From positions 186,001-250,000 of IMG/VR virus record IMGVR_UViG_3300028840_002431: a stretch of DNA of 64,000 nt. One strand, written 5' to 3'. The position numbers and the translations under genes were made by a program. Shown one piece after another: positions 609-44,335 of the stretch. The notes beneath the pieces are model-generated. The model did no database searches. It was given only the letters and a program-made list of their open reading frames with translations, and was not told the DNA's origin. Every line of letters begins with the position of its first letter. Position 1 is the stretch's first letter.

Positions 609-1043
609 TTATCGCCCCTGGTAGGAGTAGGCTTCGCCCTCGCTCACCCTGCGGCCCATCTCGCGCTCCAACTCACGAAGCTTTCGGTTCAGGGAGGCAG
701 CCCGTTTGCGCACCTGAGCGGGCGGCAGTTCGCCGTCGCAACTGAGGTTTTCCGGACTCAGGCAGCAATAGACGCTCAGGATGTCGTCCATGATTTCCGC
801 TTCGGAACGCTTCGGCTTGGGAGCCTCCGGAGCGGGAGCCGACGACCCGTTGGCCGGGCGGCACAGGCTCTTGGCCACCTTCCATTCGGTGCCGATCGCG
901 TAGTCCTTCTGGGTGCCCCTGGACTCGTCCTGACGCACCTTCACGGTCTTGCGGTTGACCTTGACCACCGTGCCGTGGGTTTGCTCACCGTTGGGCCGCC
1001 CGAAGACGACCTTCATGCCTTTGTGGAATTCTTGTGTCATCAT
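609..1043 (-). CDS. hypothetical protein (SH3-like N-terminus possible)
   Basis: 144 aa; ATG 7 nt after class A motif. Confidence 0.8.
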   Translation of the reverse strand: MMTQEFHKGMKVVFGRPNGEQTHGTVVKVNRKTVKVRQDESRGTQKDYAIGTEWKVAKSLCRPANGSSAPAPEAPKPKRSEAEIMDDILSVYCCLSPENLSCDGELPPAQVRKRAASLNRKLRELEREMGRRVSEGEAYSYQGR

Positions 1044-1610: not shown

Positions 1611-1656
1611 AAAAGTTTTTAGGTTCCGGTCGCCCGTCTGTAAGGGGCGTAAGAGG

Positions 1657-1856
1657 TCTTTGACAAGTCGGTTGTTTGACAGGGGCGTAGCTTAAGGACA
1701 AGCACGGAAAAGCCCGGCTTGGGGCGTACGACCCGAGACGAGAAGTTCACATTAGGCCAATGTGGACGCCGTGTTTGAAAGCGCTCAGCTAATACCTGAG
1801 AGATTTCGGTAGCGCGTAAGCAATCCCGTCCGCCCCTGTGAGACAACCGGCAAAGA
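1657..1856 (+). ncRNA. candidate structured ncRNA or leader RNA, ~200 nt
   Basis: nested helices 1667-75/1843-51, 1679-87/1831-39, 1690-94/1817-21, 1701-07/1769-75, 1718-23/1732-37, 1745-53/1759-67, 1781-85/1811-15; class A-like motif at 1618-1643 upstream. Confidence 0.6.
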
Positions 1857-1862
1857 AACCAA

Positions 1863-2168
1863 ATGAAATACTCCACAAGATTGGCAAACGAACTCAGGGT
1901 GGCCTTGTTTGACCGGGATGACCAGTCGTTCAAAGACAAAGGGGACCCGGTCTTCTACAGGCCCAAGGATGGTCGCCTGACGGAAGCAAAAGAGACATGG
2001 GCGATCCACGGTGTCTGCCTCGAATGCCACCGGCTCAGTCTCAGCGTTGCCCGTTGCGCCGATTGCGGCACTGCTTATGCCGAAGACGACTTACAGGGCG
2101 TAAAGGCCGAACGGATGGTCGCCGCCCAACTGTTCACCGCCGCGAGAATCATACGGGAGAGCCGATGA
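1863..2168 (+). CDS. hypothetical Zn-binding protein
   Basis: CLEC...CADC. Confidence 0.65.
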   Translation: MKYSTRLANELRVALFDRDDQSFKDKGDPVFYRPKDGRLTEAKETWAIHGVCLECHRLSLSVARCADCGTAYAEDDLQGVKAERMVAAQLFTAARIIRESR

Positions 2169-2587
2169 TCTGCCAGCGCTCCGGGTATTGCTGTATCACG
2201 ATGCCGGTCGTGGTCATCGTTCCGACAAGCAAGCATGGGGAATGGATGCCGCCCCCGCAACCAAGCTACCGGGCATACTTCAAGGACGGAAGCGTCCGGT
2301 GTCCGAACCTGATATTCGACGGGCCGGAAGCCTCTTGCAACGTCCATGACGAACCCTGGTACAAACACACCCCGTGCTTCACCTACGGCAACCCGGACCT
2401 GGACCCGGATTTCATCCCCAAGATCGGGCGGCCGTGCCCCGTGGGTCAGGCCGTTCTCAAGAAGTTCGGGAGTCTGGTCGGGCTGTACGGGGACCCGAAA
2501 GACGAAGGCGTGAGGTTGATACGCGAACTCAAACCGGAAGAGGTCGAGCCGTTCCTACTGGGAAGGCTCACGGGACACGTCTGGTGA
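2165..2587 (+). CDS. cysteine-cluster (YkgJ-like) protein
   Basis: MICQRSGYCC...CPNL...CNVH...PC; ATGA overlap with previous stop. Confidence 0.55.
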   Translation: MICQRSGYCCITMPVVVIVPTSKHGEWMPPPQPSYRAYFKDGSVRCPNLIFDGPEASCNVHDEPWYKHTPCFTYGNPDLDPDFIPKIGRPCPVGQAVLKKFGSLVGLYGDPKDEGVRLIRELKPEEVEPFLLGRLTGHVW

Positions 2588-2597
2588 AGGAGACAGG

Positions 2598-2699
2598 ATG
2601 GCTCTCGTAAGGTATTGCCCAAACTGCCACCGGCAAGAGATGATCATGGTCAAAGACGGCTGGTCTTGTAGGTGTTGCGGCCACTTCGAGGCGGACTAA
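2598..2699 (+). CDS. small zinc-ribbon protein (33 aa)
   Basis: SD AAGGAG; CPNC...CRCCG. Confidence 0.55.
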   Translation: MALVRYCPNCHRQEMIMVKDGWSCRCCGHFEAD

Positions 2700-9258: not shown

Positions 9259-10026
9259 ATGTACGCAATAGGATATATGCCGGACAGCGACTATCCGGAT
9301 GAGCGAGACAAAGACGCGAAAGACATTCTAACCGCCGATACACACGATTCGGCCACCCTGTCTCATTGGGTTGTTGAAGTGTTGAATCAACGGAATCTAG
9401 GCTCATGCGTTGCCAACGCTGGCTTCCAGGCCATCCGTATGTCTCAGCGCTGTCAGAACGTGGCCGTAATCCCTCCTCTGGGTTCCCGCCTGTTCGGGTA
9501 TTATAACCCCCGGACGTACCACGACGCCGAAGACGACGACAACGGCACCTACATCCGGTTCTTCTTCAAGGCTCTCAACAAGTTCGGCTTCTGTCCCGAG
9601 AGCAAGTACCCCTACTATACCGACAAGTTTGCCGACAAGCCGGACCACGGTATCTATCGGGCGGCCATCGATCAGAAGGACCCGACGGACTATTACCGAA
9701 TCCGTGGGACCGGAGATGACCGGATCGAAGCTATCAAGAAGGCCATAACACAGGGGCACCCGGTTGTTTTCGGTACCACTGTGACGGGCAAGTTCTGTCG
9801 AGGTGACGCGGACGGTATCATCCCAAGGCCGACCGGAGGGTATCGAGGCGGTCACGCCATGGTGGTCGAAGGCTTCAACGATGCCGAAGAGTATTGCGTC
9901 ATACTTAATAGCTGGGGCAGCGGCTTTGGTGACGGTGGTCGGTGTAAGTTCAGTTACGACTACATGACCTGGAGTCGGACAAGTGACCTTTGGGTGGTCC
10001 GTTCGGCTCCGAGCTACTCCGAGTAA
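9259..10026 (+). CDS. papain-like C1 family cysteine peptidase
   Basis: NQRNLGSCVANA (Q, catalytic C), GGHAM (H), NSWG (N); SD AGGAGG. Confidence 0.9.
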   Translation: MYAIGYMPDSDYPDERDKDAKDILTADTHDSATLSHWVVEVLNQRNLGSCVANAGFQAIRMSQRCQNVAVIPPLGSRLFGYYNPRTYHDAEDDDNGTYIRFFFKALNKFGFCPESKYPYYTDKFADKPDHGIYRAAIDQKDPTDYYRIRGTGDDRIEAIKKAITQGHPVVFGTTVTGKFCRGDADGIIPRPTGGYRGGHAMVVEGFNDAEEYCVILNSWGSGFGDGGRCKFSYDYMTWSRTSDLWVVRSAPSYSE

Positions 10027-17617: not shown

Positions 17618-18868
17618 ATGCCTGGAAGAATTCCTTGGAAAGCCATCGTTGGCATAGTCGGCCTCATTATTGCGGCCGTCGTCGTCGGAAACATGTTCAC
17701 CTACGTGGACGCGGGTGAATACGTCGTTAAACAGACAATCGGAGGTCAGCTATCCGTGTTCGAGACGCCCGGCTTCAAGTGGCAAGGACTGGCTAAGGTC
17801 ACTCCTTACCCGAAAGCCACCCAGTTCGATTTCGACATGGAGATGAAGCAACAGGACGACGCCAAAGAGTACGAAGACACGAGCCGCTGTCTGCCCATCC
17901 GGTTCAACGATCAAGGCCGTGCTCGTATATGCGGGACCTTGCGTGTGGACGTGCCGGGAGGGAAGCAGTTGATCAAACTGCACGAACAATTCGGCAGCAT
18001 AAGATCCATCATGTCCGGACTGGTTGCACCCGCCATTGCCAAGGCCACGTACCAGACCGGGCCTCTCATGTCCTCCCGCGAGTCGGCGTCGGAAAAGAGG
18101 GGCGACCTACAAGACCACATCGTCAATCAGGCGAAAGTGGGCTTCTACAAGAAAGTTACCAAAGAGGTGAAGGTGGAAGACCCCAGCGCTCCGATGTCGA
18201 AGGACCCGAATACCGGAGAGTTGAAGGTGGCTATGAAGTTGGTCAAGATCTCCGAGCCTGTGTTGGGTAAAGACGGTACTCCGGTAATCCAGGAAAAGTC
18301 GGCCCTGGCCAAGTTCGGCATCAGTTTCTACAACTTTGCCATTAAGCGGATCGCCTATTCCAAGTCGGTTCAAGACCAGATCGAGAAACAGCGTGAGCGA
18401 GAGGTCGCCATTCAGACCGCTATCGCACAGGCCAAGAAAGCTGAACAGGACGCCAAGACCGCAAAGGCAAACGAGGAGGCCGATGTAGCCAAGAAACGCG
18501 CCGAGATGCAGGTTGACAAGATCGAAGCTGTGACCCAGGCCGAGAAAACCAGAGACGTTGCCGCTCTCAACCTGGAGAAGGCCGAGTTGGACGCGAAAGC
18601 GGTCATAGCTACCGGTAAGGCGGAAGCGGAAGCTCGTCGTTTGAAGATGCAAGCTGACGGTGCGTTGAACCAGAAGCTAGAGGCATGGATCAAGGTCAGC
18701 GAGTTTTACGCTCAAGCGCTGGCTCAAGCCAAGCCCGGAGCACTTGTCCCGAATCTGATGATGTGCGGCGGCGAGGGCGGCAAGGGTAAAGGCGGGGCCA
18801 ACGACCTCGTACAGCTATTGACGGCTCAGACCGCACGGCAACTGAGCGTCGATACCCAACCCAAGTAA
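17618..18868 (+). CDS. SPFH/band-7 family membrane protein
   Basis: N-terminal TM, YVDAGEYVV, Ala/Glu-rich coiled coil, AEAEA...ADGAL..KL. Confidence 0.8.
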   Translation: MPGRIPWKAIVGIVGLIIAAVVVGNMFTYVDAGEYVVKQTIGGQLSVFETPGFKWQGLAKVTPYPKATQFDFDMEMKQQDDAKEYEDTSRCLPIRFNDQGRARICGTLRVDVPGGKQLIKLHEQFGSIRSIMSGLVAPAIAKATYQTGPLMSSRESASEKRGDLQDHIVNQAKVGFYKKVTKEVKVEDPSAPMSKDPNTGELKVAMKLVKISEPVLGKDGTPVIQEKSALAKFGISFYNFAIKRIAYSKSVQDQIEKQREREVAIQTAIAQAKKAEQDAKTAKANEEADVAKKRAEMQVDKIEAVTQAEKTRDVAALNLEKAELDAKAVIATGKAEAEARRLKMQADGALNQKLEAWIKVSEFYAQALAQAKPGALVPNLMMCGGEGGKGKGGANDLVQLLTAQTARQLSVDTQPK

Positions 18869-32427: not shown

Positions 32428-32454
32428 TTACAGATAGACGGCCGCTAACCTAAA
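32428..32454 (-). promoter_or_regulatory. class A promoter-like motif
   Basis: TTTAGG-N17-GTAA. Confidence 0.6.
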
Positions 32455-38795: not shown

Positions 38796-38872
38796 CGGGG
38801 TAAGGGCTTGATGGTAAGCCGCTTGGTTCGGGACCAAGAGTTCTGCGGGTTCGACTCCCGCTACCCCGACCA
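38796..38872 (+). tRNA. tRNA-Pro(CGG)
   Basis: CGGGGTA/TACCCCG-ACCA; CTTGG-TTCGGGA-CCAAG; non-canonical position 8. Confidence 0.85.
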
Positions 38873-38879
38873 AAGAAAC

Positions 38880-38956
38880 CGGGGAGTAGCTCAGTCTGGC
38901 GGAGCGTCTGCTTTGGGAGCAGAAAGTCGTCGGTTCGAATCCGGCCTCCCCGACCA
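38880..38956 (+). tRNA. tRNA-Pro(TGG)
   Basis: canonical cloverleaf, TCTGC-TTTGGGA-GCAGA, ACCA. Confidence 0.95.
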
Positions 38957-38965
38957 GGAGGACAA

Positions 38966-39094
38966 ATGGCTAAGAAAGCGTGCATGTCCAACGTTCGTGA
39001 TCCAGAGAACCGGAGCAAAAAGGGATGCGTGTGCGGCGGCCACAGCCGGGCCGCACGGAAGAAGAAAAAGAAGTGGACCAGAAAGAAAGCGTGA
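38966..39094 (+). CDS. small basic protein (42 aa)
   Basis: SD AGGAGG; between tRNAs. Confidence 0.55.
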   Translation: MAKKACMSNVRDPENRSKKGCVCGGHSRAARKKKKKWTRKKA

Positions 39095-39168
39095 TGCGGT
39101 GCAAGCGGGGATGCTGACTGGGTTTCATAAGCCCGGTTTATCGAGTTCGACTCTCGGGGCCGCAACCA
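39095..39168 (+). tRNA. tRNA(CAT)-like (Met/Ile2), degenerate D arm
   Basis: loop TTCATAA, T loop TTCGACT, ACCA end. Confidence 0.6.
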
Positions 39169-39174
39169 AGGAAA

Positions 39175-39801
39175 ATGAAATCATACCCAACAATACCGTA
39201 CGAGGTGCTCAAGGGGCTTCCAGTCTACATCTACGATAAGCTGGACGGTTCCAACATCCGTGCGGAATGGAGTAAGAAAAGAGGCTTCTACAAGTTCGGC
39301 TCACGGCGTCGGCTGCTTTCGGACGACTCGTTCATTATCAAAGAGGCAGAAGGGCTGATCCTGGCCCAACGAGAGGCGCTCGAAAGATACGTCGTAGACC
39401 AGTTTCGGTGTGACAGGTGTATATGCTTCTTTGAGTTCTGGGGTCCAAGCTCATTTGCCGGTCTACATAAAGAGGACGAGACGCACGAGACGGCCCTGTT
39501 GGACATCGAGATATATAAAAGAGGCTTCATCGACCAGAAGGCGTACCGGAAACTTCAAGAGAAGCTGGATGTCCCGACGCCCCGGTTTCTAACACACGAG
39601 AAGATGACAGCGGAGATAGAGGAACAAGCCAGGGCCGGTGAACTCGGAAGCTTTGAGGGGATCGTCTGCAAGTCAATAATGACCGACAAATACAAGAAGC
39701 CCCTCCGATTCAAGGTCAAGTCCCGGCAGTGGATCGAGAAAGTCAAAGCCATTCACGCCGGGAACCAAAAGGTTCTGAGAGAACTGTTAGAAGGTCTGTG
39801 A
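39175..39801 (+). CDS. RNA ligase (Rnl2-like nucleotidyltransferase)
   Basis: YDKLDGSNIR (motif I), FFEFWG, EGIVCK, FKVKS. Confidence 0.75.
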   Translation: MKSYPTIPYEVLKGLPVYIYDKLDGSNIRAEWSKKRGFYKFGSRRRLLSDDSFIIKEAEGLILAQREALERYVVDQFRCDRCICFFEFWGPSSFAGLHKEDETHETALLDIEIYKRGFIDQKAYRKLQEKLDVPTPRFLTHEKMTAEIEEQARAGELGSFEGIVCKSIMTDKYKKPLRFKVKSRQWIEKVKAIHAGNQKVLRELLEGL

Positions 39802-40013
39802 TGTTCGAGGAACACGAAATCGACTACCAGATGGATCGGCTCCGGAAAAAGGCCCAGAGCCTGGGAGTAACATTCAGGGAGTATGAATTCGACAGGATGG
39901 CCCAGAAGTTCGGGTTTTGGCAGACGATGGCCTGGACCGACAACATTCTTGACCGATTAAGGACTTTACGACACGGCAACCGGTGTAGTATTGAGAAGGT
40001 GGACCATGTGTAA
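39801..40013 (+). CDS. hypothetical protein
   Basis: TGATG coupling. Confidence 0.55.
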   Translation: MFEEHEIDYQMDRLRKKAQSLGVTFREYEFDRMAQKFGFWQTMAWTDNILDRLRTLRHGNRCSIEKVDHV

Positions 40014-40048
40014 GATATGCAAACGGGTAGCGCCCGTCCAAAAGACAG

Positions 40049-40126
40049 CCGCCCGTAGCTCAATTTGGTTAGAGTCCCCCGCTCATAACGGGGAAGTTGT
40101 TGGTTCGAGTCCAACCGGGCGGACCA
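40049..40126 (+). tRNA. tRNA(CAT), Met or Ile2
   Basis: CCGCCCG/CGGGCGG-ACCA; CCCCG-CTCATAA-CGGGG; class B motif at 39981 upstream. Confidence 0.9.
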
Positions 40127-43261: not shown

Positions 43262-43520
43262 AGAAGCACAAATGACCGAAGAAGAGGCACGGCAACTTCA
43301 TAAGATCACGACGACCCTAGCCATCATGAAAGAATACGTGGAGGCGGGAGCCACGAACGAGCAGATTGCCCAGCTACAGAGAAGCTTCTACGCCTCAGAG
43401 AACAGTCCGTGGTTGTACGAAGAAGCTCCGAAGCCGAAGAGAAAACCAAAGAGAAAGCCGAAGAAGAGAGAGAAGCCGCTACCGTTGTTCTACCGTTGTC
43501 TCAAGAAGGAGATGTTCTAG
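43254..43520 (+). CDS. hypothetical protein
   Basis: KPKRKPKRKPK repeat. Confidence 0.6.
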   Translation: MAKEAQMTEEEARQLHKITTTLAIMKEYVEAGATNEQIAQLQRSFYASENSPWLYEEAPKPKRKPKRKPKKREKPLPLFYRCLKKEMF

Positions 43521-43594
43521 GGAGTGTCGCCAAGAGGATTGGCCCCGGTTTCCTAAACCGGTCAACGCAGGTTCGAATCCTGTCACTCCCGCCA
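43520..43594 (+). tRNA. tRNA-Arg(CCT)
   Basis: GGGAGTG/CACTCCC-GCCA; CCGGT-TTCCTAA-ACCGG. Confidence 0.9.
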
Positions 43595-43853: not shown

Positions 43854-44078
43854 ATGGTCGGCATAATAATATTCGTCGTAGCCGCAGTTCTGCTAACGGT
43901 TTGGACTTCGCCGTGGCACCCTAAAGAATCGCCTATCAGAAAACTCACGCATAATTATCTCGGATGGCATACCGTGAGCAAAGATCAAACCCAATGGCAC
44001 GACGGCGCTTCGTTCCACTGTGTTTGTGATCAATGCGGCAAAGAGGTAATGCAGGACAGCCAGGGAAACTGGTTCTAA
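43854..44078 (+). CDS. membrane-anchored Zn-ribbon protein
   Basis: TM plus CDQCGKEVMQDSQGNWF. Confidence 0.65.
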   Translation: MVGIIIFVVAAVLLTVWTSPWHPKESPIRKLTHNYLGWHTVSKDQTQWHDGASFHCVCDQCGKEVMQDSQGNWF

Positions 44079-44110
44079 CACGGGCCGAGAGCGGTGTAAT
44101 ATATGTAGCC

Positions 44111-44335
44111 ATGCACACCGCTTTCACAAGGCTACTCTGTCTCGTCTTTGGCCATAAGTGGTATTGGTTTTTGGCCAAAGGCGATGACGGAGAACCCGGC
44201 GAGGACAAGTGCTTTCGCTGCGGACTCAGAAGAGACAACCATGACCTGCCATGCCGGTGTGTCACAAGAGGGTGCCGGTGTACGCCCGGTGGTGTAATTA
44301 AATACTACCACCCCGACGAACGGAGCCTTTACTGA
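44111..44335 (+). CDS. small Cys-rich protein (DUF1660-like start)
   Basis: LLCLVFGHKW...CFRCG; class B motif at 44092. Confidence 0.55.
   Translation: MHTAFTRLLCLVFGHKWYWFLAKGDDGEPGEDKCFRCGLRRDNHDLPCRCVTRGCRCTPGGVIKYYHPDERSLY

What the first reader, a model, noticed from the sequence alone, without database searches (positions are those of the whole stretch)
1618..1862. Unassigned ~200-nt multi-branch structured RNA with its own promoter-like motif
Seen: an intergenic region with at least seven mutually compatible nested helices and a long terminal stem pairing 1657-87 with 1831-56. It starts just after a TTTAGG-N16-GTAA motif and ends 6 nt before ATG 1863, which lacks an obvious SD. I cannot match it to tRNA, tmRNA, SRP, 6S or a known riboswitch. 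Inference: a new sRNA or a translation-controlling leader.
Basis: partly seen in the sequence, partly recalled or inferred. Interest (0 to 1): 0.6.

Follow-up and report, generated by a model that had tools for sequence, protein, structure and literature searches.

The report
Long folded leader before a phage gene
A 250-base gap in a 416-kb phage genome holds a real phage promoter followed by a 212-base untranslated leader closed by one strong 20-base-pair stem; it is most likely an mRNA leader peculiar to this phage rather than a new RNA gene, and no relatives exist to test it further.

Summary
The window comes from a 416,539-bp virus record, a huge phage. The region 1611-1862 is non-coding and lies between two + strand genes.

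**What holds up**
- The long stem is real: 1667-1687 pairs with 1831-1851, 20 bp, pair probability 0.98.
There are 25 sites against about 4 in shuffles, and 16 have an ATG exactly at the predicted +1.
- That family places the transcript start at A1651.
- There is no Rfam match, no tRNA or tmRNA, and no terminator before ATG 1863. Homologues confirm ATG 1863 as the true start.

**What does not hold up**
- The "multi-branch" interior folds no better than shuffled sequence: z -1.35, and z -0.8 once the 3' arm is removed. Almost all of the signal is one inverted repeat.
- Covariation cannot be tested. Every other contig carrying the region is identical, and homologous genes in other phages have no such leader.

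**Best reading (confidence 0.4)**
This is a lineage-specific insert of about 190 nt in a compact promoter-SD-AUG cassette. Its closing helix loops it out, leaving a 5'-terminal SD-like AAGAGG close to the AUG. That resembles the T4 gene 38/25 split ribosome-binding site, on a much larger scale.

**Rivals**
A processed sRNA, a DNA-level operator array (three GGGGCGTA boxes), or functionless debris.

Interest is modest.

The parts
1619..1625 (+). Upstream promoter element TTAGGTT.
   Evidence: Member of the family TTAGRTT-N12-15-GTAR-N4-7-T|A. There are 25 sites against a mean of 4.05 in 20 shuffles.
1640..1643 (+). Downstream promoter element GTAA, at -11 to -8 relative to the predicted start.
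   Evidence: It sits in the same register (G-11 T-10 A-9) as the other family members.
1651..1651 (+). Predicted transcription start (A following T).
   Evidence: In 16 of 25 family members this A is the A of an ATG that opens an ORF of 60-638 aa, i.e. leaderless. This is an inference by register; the start has not been mapped.
1651..1656 (+). 5'-terminal SD-like AAGAGG.
   Evidence: It binds the anti-SD at -6.5 kcal/mol. Leadered siblings start with AGGAGG, AGGAGA, ATAAGGAGG or AAGGA. The first five bases are mostly unpaired in the ensemble.
1644..1728 (+). Three direct GGGGCGTA boxes at 1644-1651, 1682-1689 and 1721-1728. The first spans -7 to +1 of the promoter.
   Evidence: There are only 10 copies on both strands of the 416-kb genome, and 3 of them lie here on one strand within 85 nt. 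Units 1629-1651 and 1667-1689 are 74% alike over 23 nt.
1657..1661 (+). Weak outer helix, 5' side (UCUUU); pairs with 1852-1856.
   Evidence: Present in the MFE of 1611-1862. Pair probability is 0.53 to 0.007 depending on context.
1667..1687 (+). Closing helix P1, 5' arm.
   Evidence: Inverted repeat I4. 20 bp, two U-G wobbles that favour the + strand, pair probability 0.98-0.99.
1688..1830 (+). Enclosed 143-nt interior. Robust hairpins at 1745-1767 and 1784-1800; the other helices are uncertain.
   Evidence: z -1.35 when folded alone.
1831..1851 (+). Closing helix P1, 3' arm.
   Evidence: Removing it drops the fold's z-score to -0.82.
1852..1862 (+). A-rich pre-start spacer AAAGAAACCAA. Its first five bases, AAAGA (1852-1856), are the 3' side of the weak outer helix; the 10-mer GGCAAAGAAA spans 1849-1858.
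   Evidence: No SD. It is largely unpaired. The 10-mer also precedes the ATG of the sibling promoter at window 32454(-) and occurs only 4 times in the genome.
1863..2168 (+). orf101, a Zn-ribbon protein of unknown function and the first gene of the transcript.
   Evidence: 30 distant homologues whose N-termini align with MKYS. Model pLDDT is 95 with no PDB fold match.
2165..2699 (+). orf140 (2165-2587, Cys-rich, ATGA overlap with orf101) and orf33 (2598-2699, Zn-ribbon). Probably the same operon.
   Evidence: ORF layout. orf140 has homologues at 51% identity.

Best explanation
The region is the promoter plus the 212-nt 5' untranslated leader of the orf101-orf140-orf33 transcript of a huge phage. 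It is not a separate RNA gene.

Transcription is predicted to start at A1651, from a promoter of a phage-wide family. Most members of that family give leaderless mRNAs. The few that have leaders begin with a Shine-Dalgarno tract.

Here the transcript also begins with an SD-like AAGAGG. About 190-200 nt then separate it from the start codon. This intervening piece looks like a lineage-specific insert. Its two ends form a 20-bp helix (1667-1687 with 1831-1851, possibly extended by 1657-1661 with 1852-1856). The helix loops the insert out as a closed domain.

That leaves the 5' SD tract and the A-rich AUG region single-stranded and side by side. Across the helix the spacing is 6 nt if the weak outer helix forms, and about 21 nt if only P1 forms. 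Translation of orf101 would therefore depend on formation of the helix. The long duplex could also be a target for a double-strand RNase.

**Shown:** the promoter family, the non-coding status, the stem, the true start codon, and the absence of a terminator.

**Inferred:** the start site, the SD function, the loop-out effect, and any regulation.
For: **Promoter and start site**
- Promoter family: 25 sites against a mean of 4.05 in shuffles. 16 have ATG exactly at +1, against at most 1 in shuffles.
- Our site sits in the same register, with a 13-nt spacer that another member also has.
- Our site is the only family member with a long gap (212 nt) before a start codon that homologues confirm. Two other sites (window 9125-, 30242-) show 104 and 143 nt to the first ORF of at least 50 aa and were not checked; 30242- itself has an ATG at +1.
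- Leadered siblings begin with AGGAGG, AGGAGA, ATAAGGAGG or AAGGA at +1. Ours begins AAGAGG, at -6.5 kcal/mol against the anti-SD, whereas the 20 nt before ATG 1863 give only -1.7.

**Insert-like layout**
- Both flanks of the structure align with the compact sibling cassette at window 32454(-): the promoter through the SD on the left, and GGCAAAGAAA before the ATG on the right.

**Structure**
- P1 pair probability is 0.98-0.99. The first five SD bases and the AUG region are largely unpaired.
- Two U-G wobbles in P1, and six in the MFE, favour the + strand.
- No terminator lies between the promoter and the ATG.

**Gene context**
- ATG 1863 is the true start.
- Coding density is about 91%, so a 250-nt gap is unusual.

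**Precedent**
- In T4 genes 38 and 25, an intervening hairpin shortens the SD-AUG spacing from 22 to 5 nt and from 27 to 11 nt (PMC3014915).
Against: - No transcript data are available.
- There is no conservation. Seven other contigs carry the region 100% identical, so covariation cannot be assessed.
- The nearest homologues of orf101 (26-48% identity) are translationally coupled to an upstream gene or have at most 100 nt upstream. None has a leader.
- The outer helix that would give the 6-nt spacing is unstable, with probability down to 0.007. One MFE pairs the last G's of the SD tract with ACC next to the AUG.
- The A-rich open start region might initiate translation without any SD.
- SD use in this genome is only moderate: 43% of crude gene calls against 24% of random 20-mers.
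- The interior shows no excess structure.
- A 200-nt intervening domain is ten times larger than any known split ribosome-binding site.
Confidence: 0.4

Rival explanations
1. Functionless debris. An inverted-repeat-bounded insert (a decayed small mobile element or a local duplication product) sits in the 5' UTR. It is tolerated because it folds on itself and leaves the start region open. The stem has no regulatory role.
For: - The flanks match a compact sibling cassette, which is the signature of an insertion.
- The 19-nt terminal inverted repeat carries essentially all of the folding signal.
- Tandem 38-nt units suggest local duplication.
- The element is absent from all homologous loci.
- One such repeat per genome is not far from chance: 0, 0 and 1 in shuffles.
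Against: - It is a single copy in the genome.
- No second copy with both arms occurs in 185,579 prokaryote species or in IMG/VR. The only hits are scattered single 18-mers, at about chance level.
- There is no target-site duplication at either candidate boundary (reading).
- Phage genomes this dense rarely keep 200 useless bases.
Confidence: 0.25
2. DNA-level control region. The three direct GGGGCGTA boxes plus the inverted copy in the 3' arm are binding sites for a phage DNA-binding protein (an operator or iteron array) that controls the promoter. The RNA fold is a by-product of the repeats.
For: - The boxes are extremely clustered: 3 of the 10 genomic copies lie within 85 nt on one strand.
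- The first box covers -7 to +1 of the promoter.
- The P1 arms are themselves copies of the ACAGGGGCG unit in opposite orientation.
- Another locus of this genome combines direct repeats with a long inverted repeat.
- The flanking small proteins include Zn-ribbons and a protein with a very basic tail.
Against: - The spacing of 38-39 bp is out of helical phase.
- Only an 8-mer is shared by all three boxes.
- No DNA-binding domain was recognised in the neighbours.
- The wobble pairs favour an RNA reading on the + strand.
Confidence: 0.18
3. Processed small RNA. The 20-bp stem is cut by a double-strand-specific RNase. This releases a stable RNA of about 185 nt that acts in trans or binds a protein, much as rRNA and some sRNAs are excised from longer transcripts.
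For: - It has its own promoter.
- A family member also appears to drive the tRNA array (site at window 23543, tRNA-Ile at 23611).
- The stem spans two helical turns, the usual size of an RNase III substrate (my own knowledge).
- Two robust hairpins lie inside.
Against: - There is no terminator.
- The phage record has no RNase III gene and the host is unknown.
- The interior is not more structured than chance.
- There are no homologues and no Rfam match.
Confidence: 0.12
4. Invertible DNA switch. The inverted repeats are recombination sites, and the 143-bp segment flips between the promoter and the gene.
For: - Inverted repeats flank a short segment lying between a promoter and a gene.
- A 14-kb inversion variant of this phage exists with one end 1 kb away.
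Against: - All eight copies seen (the window plus seven contigs) have the same orientation.
- The record has no tyrosine or serine recombinase.
- The arms have two mismatches.
- No promoter motif was found inside on either strand.
Confidence: 0.03

Closest known systems
Split ribosome-binding sites of phage T4 genes 38 and 25 (Nivinskas et al. 1999; Malys and Nivinskas 2009; reviewed in PMC3014915)
   Same: The SD lies too far upstream in linear sequence. A folded intervening segment brings it to a working distance from the AUG. Both are phage mRNAs, and both are lineage-restricted features.
   Different: In T4 the intervening hairpin spans about 15-20 nt (22 to 5 nt, 27 to 11 nt); here it spans about 200 nt. 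Here the SD sits at the very 5' end of the transcript. The short helix needed for close spacing is weak. Nothing has been tested experimentally.
RNase III-sensitive leader of phage lambda gene N, and the T7 early intercistronic RNase III sites
   Same: A long duplex in a phage leader close to the start codon could change translation or stability when cut.
   Different: Those sites are single irregular hairpins of about 50-80 nt, not a 20-bp helix closing a 143-nt domain. Cleavage here is untested, the host is unknown, and the phage has no RNase III gene.
Small inverted-repeat-bounded insertions in bacterial UTRs, i.e. MITEs such as the Neisseria Correia elements (my own knowledge)
   Same: About 150-200 bp, with terminal inverted repeats of about 20 bp. 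They are inserted between a promoter and a gene and are co-transcribed into a long hairpin.
   Different: This is a single copy with no family in the genome, in IMG/VR, or in 185,579 prokaryote species. It has no target-site duplication.
Riboswitches and other Rfam cis-regulatory leaders
   Same: A position in a 5' UTR, a size of about 200 nt, and a closing helix.
   Different: No Rfam family matches at E<=10. There is no expression platform: no terminator, and the AUG is not sequestered. There is no conserved aptamer because no homologues exist.

Membership tests
Any Rfam 15 family (riboswitches, 6S, SRP, tmRNA, ribozymes, CRISPR repeats, Y RNA and others) | A covariance-model match at or near the gathering score. 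| tested here: not met
   Nothing in the region at gathering thresholds. At E<=10 the only hit is U6atac at 10.5 bits against a gathering score of 33, which is chance.
tRNA / tmRNA | A cloverleaf or tmRNA architecture found by ARAGORN. | tested here: not met
   All 10 tRNAs lie elsewhere (23.6-43.6 kb). Nothing at 1611-1862.
Split (structure-bridged) ribosome-binding site, T4 gene 38/25 type | An SD-like tract upstream at a non-functional linear distance, with no SD next to the AUG. | tested here: met
   AAGAGG at 1651-1656 gives -6.5 kcal/mol. The 20 nt before ATG 1863 give -1.7 kcal/mol.
Split (structure-bridged) ribosome-binding site, T4 gene 38/25 type | A stable intervening structure that brings the SD to about 5-11 nt from the AUG. 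| tested here: inconclusive
   P1 is very stable (0.98) but leaves 10 + 11 unpaired nt. The outer helix that gives 6 nt has probability 0.007-0.53.
Split (structure-bridged) ribosome-binding site, T4 gene 38/25 type | Translation falls when the structure is destabilised. | not testable with these tools
   Needs reporter assays.
Riboswitch | An aptamer conserved across lineages, plus an expression platform (a terminator or a sequestered start). | tested here: not met
   No homologues, no terminator, and the AUG region is mostly unpaired.
Independently terminated sRNA gene | A promoter and an intrinsic terminator delimiting a short transcript. | tested here: not met
   The promoter is present. 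No stem plus U-tract lies between 1651 and 1863.
MITE / small non-autonomous transposon | Terminal inverted repeats. | tested here: met
   19-nt arms at 1669-1687 and 1831-1849, 89% complementary.
MITE / small non-autonomous transposon | Multiple copies, and a target-site duplication. | tested here: not met
   Single copy in the genome. Only chance single-arm hits in the viral and prokaryote collections. No flanking direct repeat.
Invertible promoter/segment (inverton) | Both orientations present in the population, and a site-specific recombinase. | tested here: not met
   One orientation in all eight copies seen, the window plus seven contigs. No Phage_integrase or Resolvase domain in the record. 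Raw reads could not be examined.
Retron non-coding RNA | An adjacent reverse transcriptase. | tested here: not met
   No RVT_1 anywhere in the record. The neighbours have no such domain.
Y RNA / Ro-associated RNA | A Ro (TROVE) protein partner and an Rfam Y RNA match. | tested here: not met
   No TROVE domain in the record and no Rfam hit.
Type III toxin-antitoxin repeat RNA | Near-perfect tandem repeats of about 36 nt, followed by a terminator and an endoRNase toxin gene. | tested here: not met
   The units are only 74% alike and were not detected by TRF. The downstream gene is a Zn-ribbon protein.
RNase III processing stem | A duplex of about two helical turns that is cleaved by RNase III. 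| not testable with these tools
   A 20-bp duplex is predicted. Cleavage is unknown, and the phage has no RNase III gene.

The most novel reading that the evidence does not exclude
The 190-nt domain is a sensor. Binding of a ligand or a phage protein, perhaps at the repeated GGGGCGUA motifs, would decide whether the closing helix forms. That in turn would decide whether the 5'-terminal SD and the distant AUG are brought together. This would be a new kind of translational switch that works by long-range SD-AUG bridging, in a phage that otherwise uses mostly leaderless mRNAs.
Probability: 0.07. Interest if true: 0.65.

Novelty: new member of a known kind. Interest (0 to 1): 0.3.

Why it matters
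If the loop-out model is right, this would be by far the largest structure known to sit inside a split ribosome-binding site. It would also be a clean, testable example of how an insertion into a compact phage promoter-SD-AUG cassette can be tolerated or put to use.

The firmer by-product is the promoter family itself. It gives predicted transcript starts for about 25 genes of an uncultivated 416-kb phage, and it shows that most of them would be leaderless.

As an RNA discovery the case is weak. There is one stem, no conservation, and no expression data.

Tried and rejected
**Searches for relatives**
- Synteny through the flanking proteins. orf154 has only identical copies in 5.8 billion proteins. 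The word search found the same for orf101. Neither has relatives in IMG/VR.
- The full HMMER search then found 30 distant orf101 homologues. In eight contexts examined (six with DNA, two as gene tables) none has a long upstream gap.
- orf140 homologues at 51% identity have an ordinary SD-bearing 124-nt upstream region.
- Seven further contigs carrying the region are 100% identical in it.
- blastn (near and distant modes) against 50,697 phage records found nothing.
- nhmmer against the relatives and against the phage's own genome found nothing.
- A scan with the P1 arm pattern in IMG/VR and in 185,579 prokaryote genomes gave only single, non-extending 18-mers.
- A triple GGGGCGTA pattern in IMG/VR and metagenomes gave unrelated hits plus one identical contig.
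- A structural protein found no related record in IMG/VR or among the phage records.

**Other attempts**
I made no attempt by another route.
- I did not build a covariance model. With only identical sequences, and relatives whose upstream gaps are too short to hold the element, it could not add anything.

**Ideas rejected**
- Coding remnant.
- CRISPR or solitary repeat: the units abut without spacers and there is no Rfam CRISPR hit.
- Group I intron: no Rfam hit, and its ends would not pair in a 20-bp helix.
- Archaeal bulge-helix-bulge intron: P1 has no 3-nt bulges.
- attP: no integrase.
- Replication origin at this site: no GC-skew feature here.

**Neighbouring proteins**
- The fold of orf101 (pLDDT 95) matched nothing in the PDB. 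Foldseek gave E above 3 and VIA-align gave Z at most 3.6. The neighbouring proteins therefore gave no functional clue.

**Host and transcription machinery**
- No sigma-70 region 2, TFIIB or RNA polymerase large-subunit domains occur in the record. Which polymerase reads the promoter family, and which host the phage infects, remain unknown.

Full report
**Context**

The window is bases 186,001-250,000 of a single 416,539-bp IMG/VR virus record, 55% G+C, estimated 87% complete. It is a huge phage. It carries at least 10 tRNA genes in the window, a ribonucleotide reductase, an NAD-dependent ligase and a RecD-like helicase. Its structural genes have no recognisable families.

The finding lies in a 252-nt gap (1611-1862) between two + strand genes. 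orf154 runs from 1146 to 1610 and orf101 from 1863 to 2168. orf101 is followed by orf140, with an ATGA overlap, and then by a 33-aa Zn-ribbon ORF.

Yes for the anatomy, but only partly for its significance.

- The gap has no + strand ORF of 20 aa or more. The - strand ORFs overlap the real flanking genes and match no family.
- The long stem is there. 1667-1687 pairs with 1831-1851, giving 20 bp with one G/G mismatch and two U-G wobbles. Its mean pair probability is 0.98-0.99 however much downstream sequence is included.
- The whole gap folds better than dinucleotide shuffles: z -3.4 for 1611-1862 and z -5.2 for 1651-1862.
- A 200-nt window starting at 1660 ranks second of 4163 windows of the genome after correction for G+C. 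I chose the register to fit it.
- The minus strand folds a little worse, at z -3.0. The wobble pairs would be A-C mismatches there.

The signal nevertheless comes from one feature.

- The 143-nt interior alone has z -1.35, and 21 of 200 shuffles fold as well.
- The transcript truncated before the 3' arm has z -0.82.
- Apart from hairpins 1745-1767 (0.98) and 1784-1800 (0.75), the inner helices have probabilities of 0.3-0.5.
- Inverted repeats of this quality within 320 nt occur three times in the genome, against 0, 0 and 1 in three shuffled genomes.

So the stem is unusual but not overwhelming on its own. Its position in one of the few long non-coding gaps of a genome that is about 91% coding, directly behind a promoter, is what makes it worth interpreting.

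**The promoter motif is real**

- The pattern TTAGRTT (one mismatch allowed), 12-15 nt, GTAR, 4-7 nt, T, then A occurs 25 times in the genome. Twenty dinucleotide shuffles gave a mean of 4.05 and a maximum of 10.
- In 16 of the 25 sites the final A is the A of an ATG that opens an ORF of 60-638 aa. Shuffles gave at most 1. These would be leaderless mRNAs.
- Members that have a short leader start it with a purine-rich SD tract: AGGAGG + 7 nt + ATG at window 32454(-), AGGAGA at G000 116761(+), ATAAGGAGG at window 29567(-), and AAGGA at window 37388(-).
- Another site, found with a looser pattern, lies 68 nt upstream of the first tRNA of the array.

By the same register, our site predicts a start at A1651. 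Our site is the only family member with a long gap, 212 nt, before a start codon that homologues confirm. Two other sites (window 9125- and 30242-) show 104 and 143 nt to the first ORF of at least 50 aa and were not checked; 30242- has an ATG at +1.

The start codon itself is secure. Thirty distant homologues of orf101 exist, and their N-termini align with its MKYS start.

No sigma factor, TFIIB or RNA polymerase large subunit was detected in the record. Which polymerase reads these promoters is unknown.

**What the leader looks like**

- The predicted transcript begins AAGAGG, which binds the anti-SD at -6.5 kcal/mol. The 20 nt before ATG 1863 give only -1.7 kcal/mol.
- Both flanks of the structured part align with the compact sibling cassette at 32454(-). 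On the left, the match runs from the promoter through the SD tract. On the right, the 10-mer GGCAAAGAAA directly precedes both start codons and occurs only four times in the genome.
- The two downstream proteins are unrelated.
- This is the footprint of an insertion of about 190 nt into a promoter-SD-AUG cassette.
- The insert also contains three direct GGGGCGTA boxes at 1644, 1682 and 1721. These are 3 of only 10 copies on both strands of the genome. The first two lie in 23-nt units that are 74% alike. The 3' arm of the stem is the inverted copy of the second unit.
- No terminator follows the stem.

**Comparative evidence**

There is none, which is the main weakness.

- Seven other contigs from related samples carry the region, and it is 100% identical in all of them. 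They show at most 4 differences in 6.5 kb around it.
- orf154 has no relatives at all.
- orf101 homologues (26-48% identity) are translationally coupled to the preceding gene or have at most 100 nt upstream.
- orf140 homologues have an ordinary short upstream region with an SD.
- nhmmer finds nothing in those loci or elsewhere in the genome, and blastn finds nothing in 50,697 phage records.
- A scan for the stem arms across IMG/VR and 185,579 prokaryote species gave only scattered single 18-mers that do not extend. That number is about what chance predicts.

Covariation therefore cannot be assessed, and the element is specific to one phage species. I did not try another route.

**Most likely mechanism**

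The region is a cis-acting 5' leader. The stem loops out the insert as a closed domain. The 5'-terminal SD tract and the A-rich, mostly unpaired start region then lie next to each other. They are 6 nt apart across the helix if the weak outer helix 1657-1661/1852-1856 forms, and about 21 nt apart if only P1 forms.

This is the logic of the split ribosome-binding sites of T4 genes 38 and 25. There, an intervening hairpin shortens the SD-AUG spacing from 22 to 5 nt and from 27 to 11 nt, and mutations that destabilise the hairpin reduce translation (PMC3014915). The scale here is about ten times larger.

I give this 0.4. That the RNA is part of the orf101 mRNA rather than a separate gene I hold more firmly, at about 0.65.

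Points against the specific mechanism:
- the outer helix is unstable;
- one MFE pairs the last G's of the SD tract;
- only about 43% of crude gene calls in this genome have an SD;
- the open A-rich start region might suffice by itself.

**Rivals**

- *Tolerated debris (0.25).* It fits the insertion footprint and the lack of interior structure. It is weakened by the lack of any element family and by the density of the genome.
- *DNA-level operator array built from the GGGGCGTA boxes (0.18).* It is supported by their extreme clustering and by the first box covering -7 to +1 of the promoter. No DNA-binding domain is recognisable nearby. The orf101 fold (pLDDT 95) matches nothing known.
- *sRNA excised at the 20-bp stem (0.12).* It lacks a terminator, a phage RNase III gene and interior structure.
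- *Invertible segment (0.03).* It lacks a recombinase and any flipped copy.
- *Retron, Y RNA, type III antitoxin RNA, CRISPR-like repeats, introns and attP.* Each fails a defining feature.

**Verdict**

The coordinates and the stem are right. The leader reading is favoured over the sRNA reading. The claim of an elaborate multi-branch RNA is not supported beyond one long-range helix and two hairpins.

It belongs to no known family and has no relatives, so it cannot be called a new RNA family. It is best filed as an orphan structured 5' leader, possibly an unusually large split ribosome-binding site. Interest is 0.3.

Noticed in passing
Genome-wide. In the window: 133(-), 1076(-), 1619(+), 23363(-), 23543(+), 29567(-), 30242(-), 32084(-), 32453(-), 34195(-), 35473(-), 37388(-), 54807(-), 58974(-), 61056(+): A phage promoter family, TTAGRTT-N12-15-GTAR-N4-7-T|A, often preceded by AAAATAA or AATTTAA. 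There are 25 sites against about 4 expected, and 16 have the start-codon ATG exactly at +1. Much of this phage's transcription in the 182-247 kb region would therefore give leaderless mRNAs. No sigma, TFIIB or RNA polymerase gene was found in the record.
   Followed up: partly
Outside the window: G000:C1:137770-138250 (locus L171, about 770-1250): A non-coding stretch of about 480 nt with 8 direct copies of a 15-18-nt motif (ATCATGGRCGTGAAG core). These flank a 140-nt element closed by a 26-nt inverted repeat. It is the best-folding 200-nt window of the whole genome (z -5.0). There is no Rfam match. It lies where the cumulative GC skew stops falling (about 140 kb), so it may be a replication origin.
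   Followed up: partly
Window 632-695, and G000 172560-186695; loci L002 and L004: Contigs from two other samples join G000 172560 (inverted) to window 695, through 75 unique nt and an inverted copy of 632-695. This is a 14-kb inversion variant of the phage. It changes the C-terminus of the protein encoded at 609-1043(-), from 144 aa to 139 aa.
   Followed up: partly
Window 1863-2168: orf101 belongs to a small family of phage proteins of about 100 aa, with 30 members at E<=1e-3. They share an invariant G-x-C-x2-C...C-x2-C Zn-ribbon and the motif TWAxHGVCL. The AlphaFold model is very confident (pLDDT 95) but matches no solved fold: Foldseek E above 3, VIA-align Z at most 3.6.
   Followed up: yes
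Window 609-1043(-): The divergently placed 144-aa protein gives a weak, sub-threshold match to the phage ProQ C-terminal-like domain (PF24203, E 0.0017, 19.4 bits against a cut-off of 27). If real, it would be an RNA-binding fold next to the leader.
   Followed up: no
Window 23611-24612, 38796-40126, 43520-43594: Ten tRNA genes by ARAGORN (eight by Rfam) lie in three groups. They include two tRNA-Ile(GAU), two tRNA-Pro and two CAU-anticodon tRNAs. A promoter-family site lies at 23543, just upstream of the first group.
   Followed up: no
Window about 18860-19060 and 44060-44260; G000 9384-9677: Other strongly folding + strand windows have GC-corrected z of about -3.1. The only other 19-nt inverted repeat within 320 nt in the genome lies at G000 9384-9677. 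None was examined.
   Followed up: no
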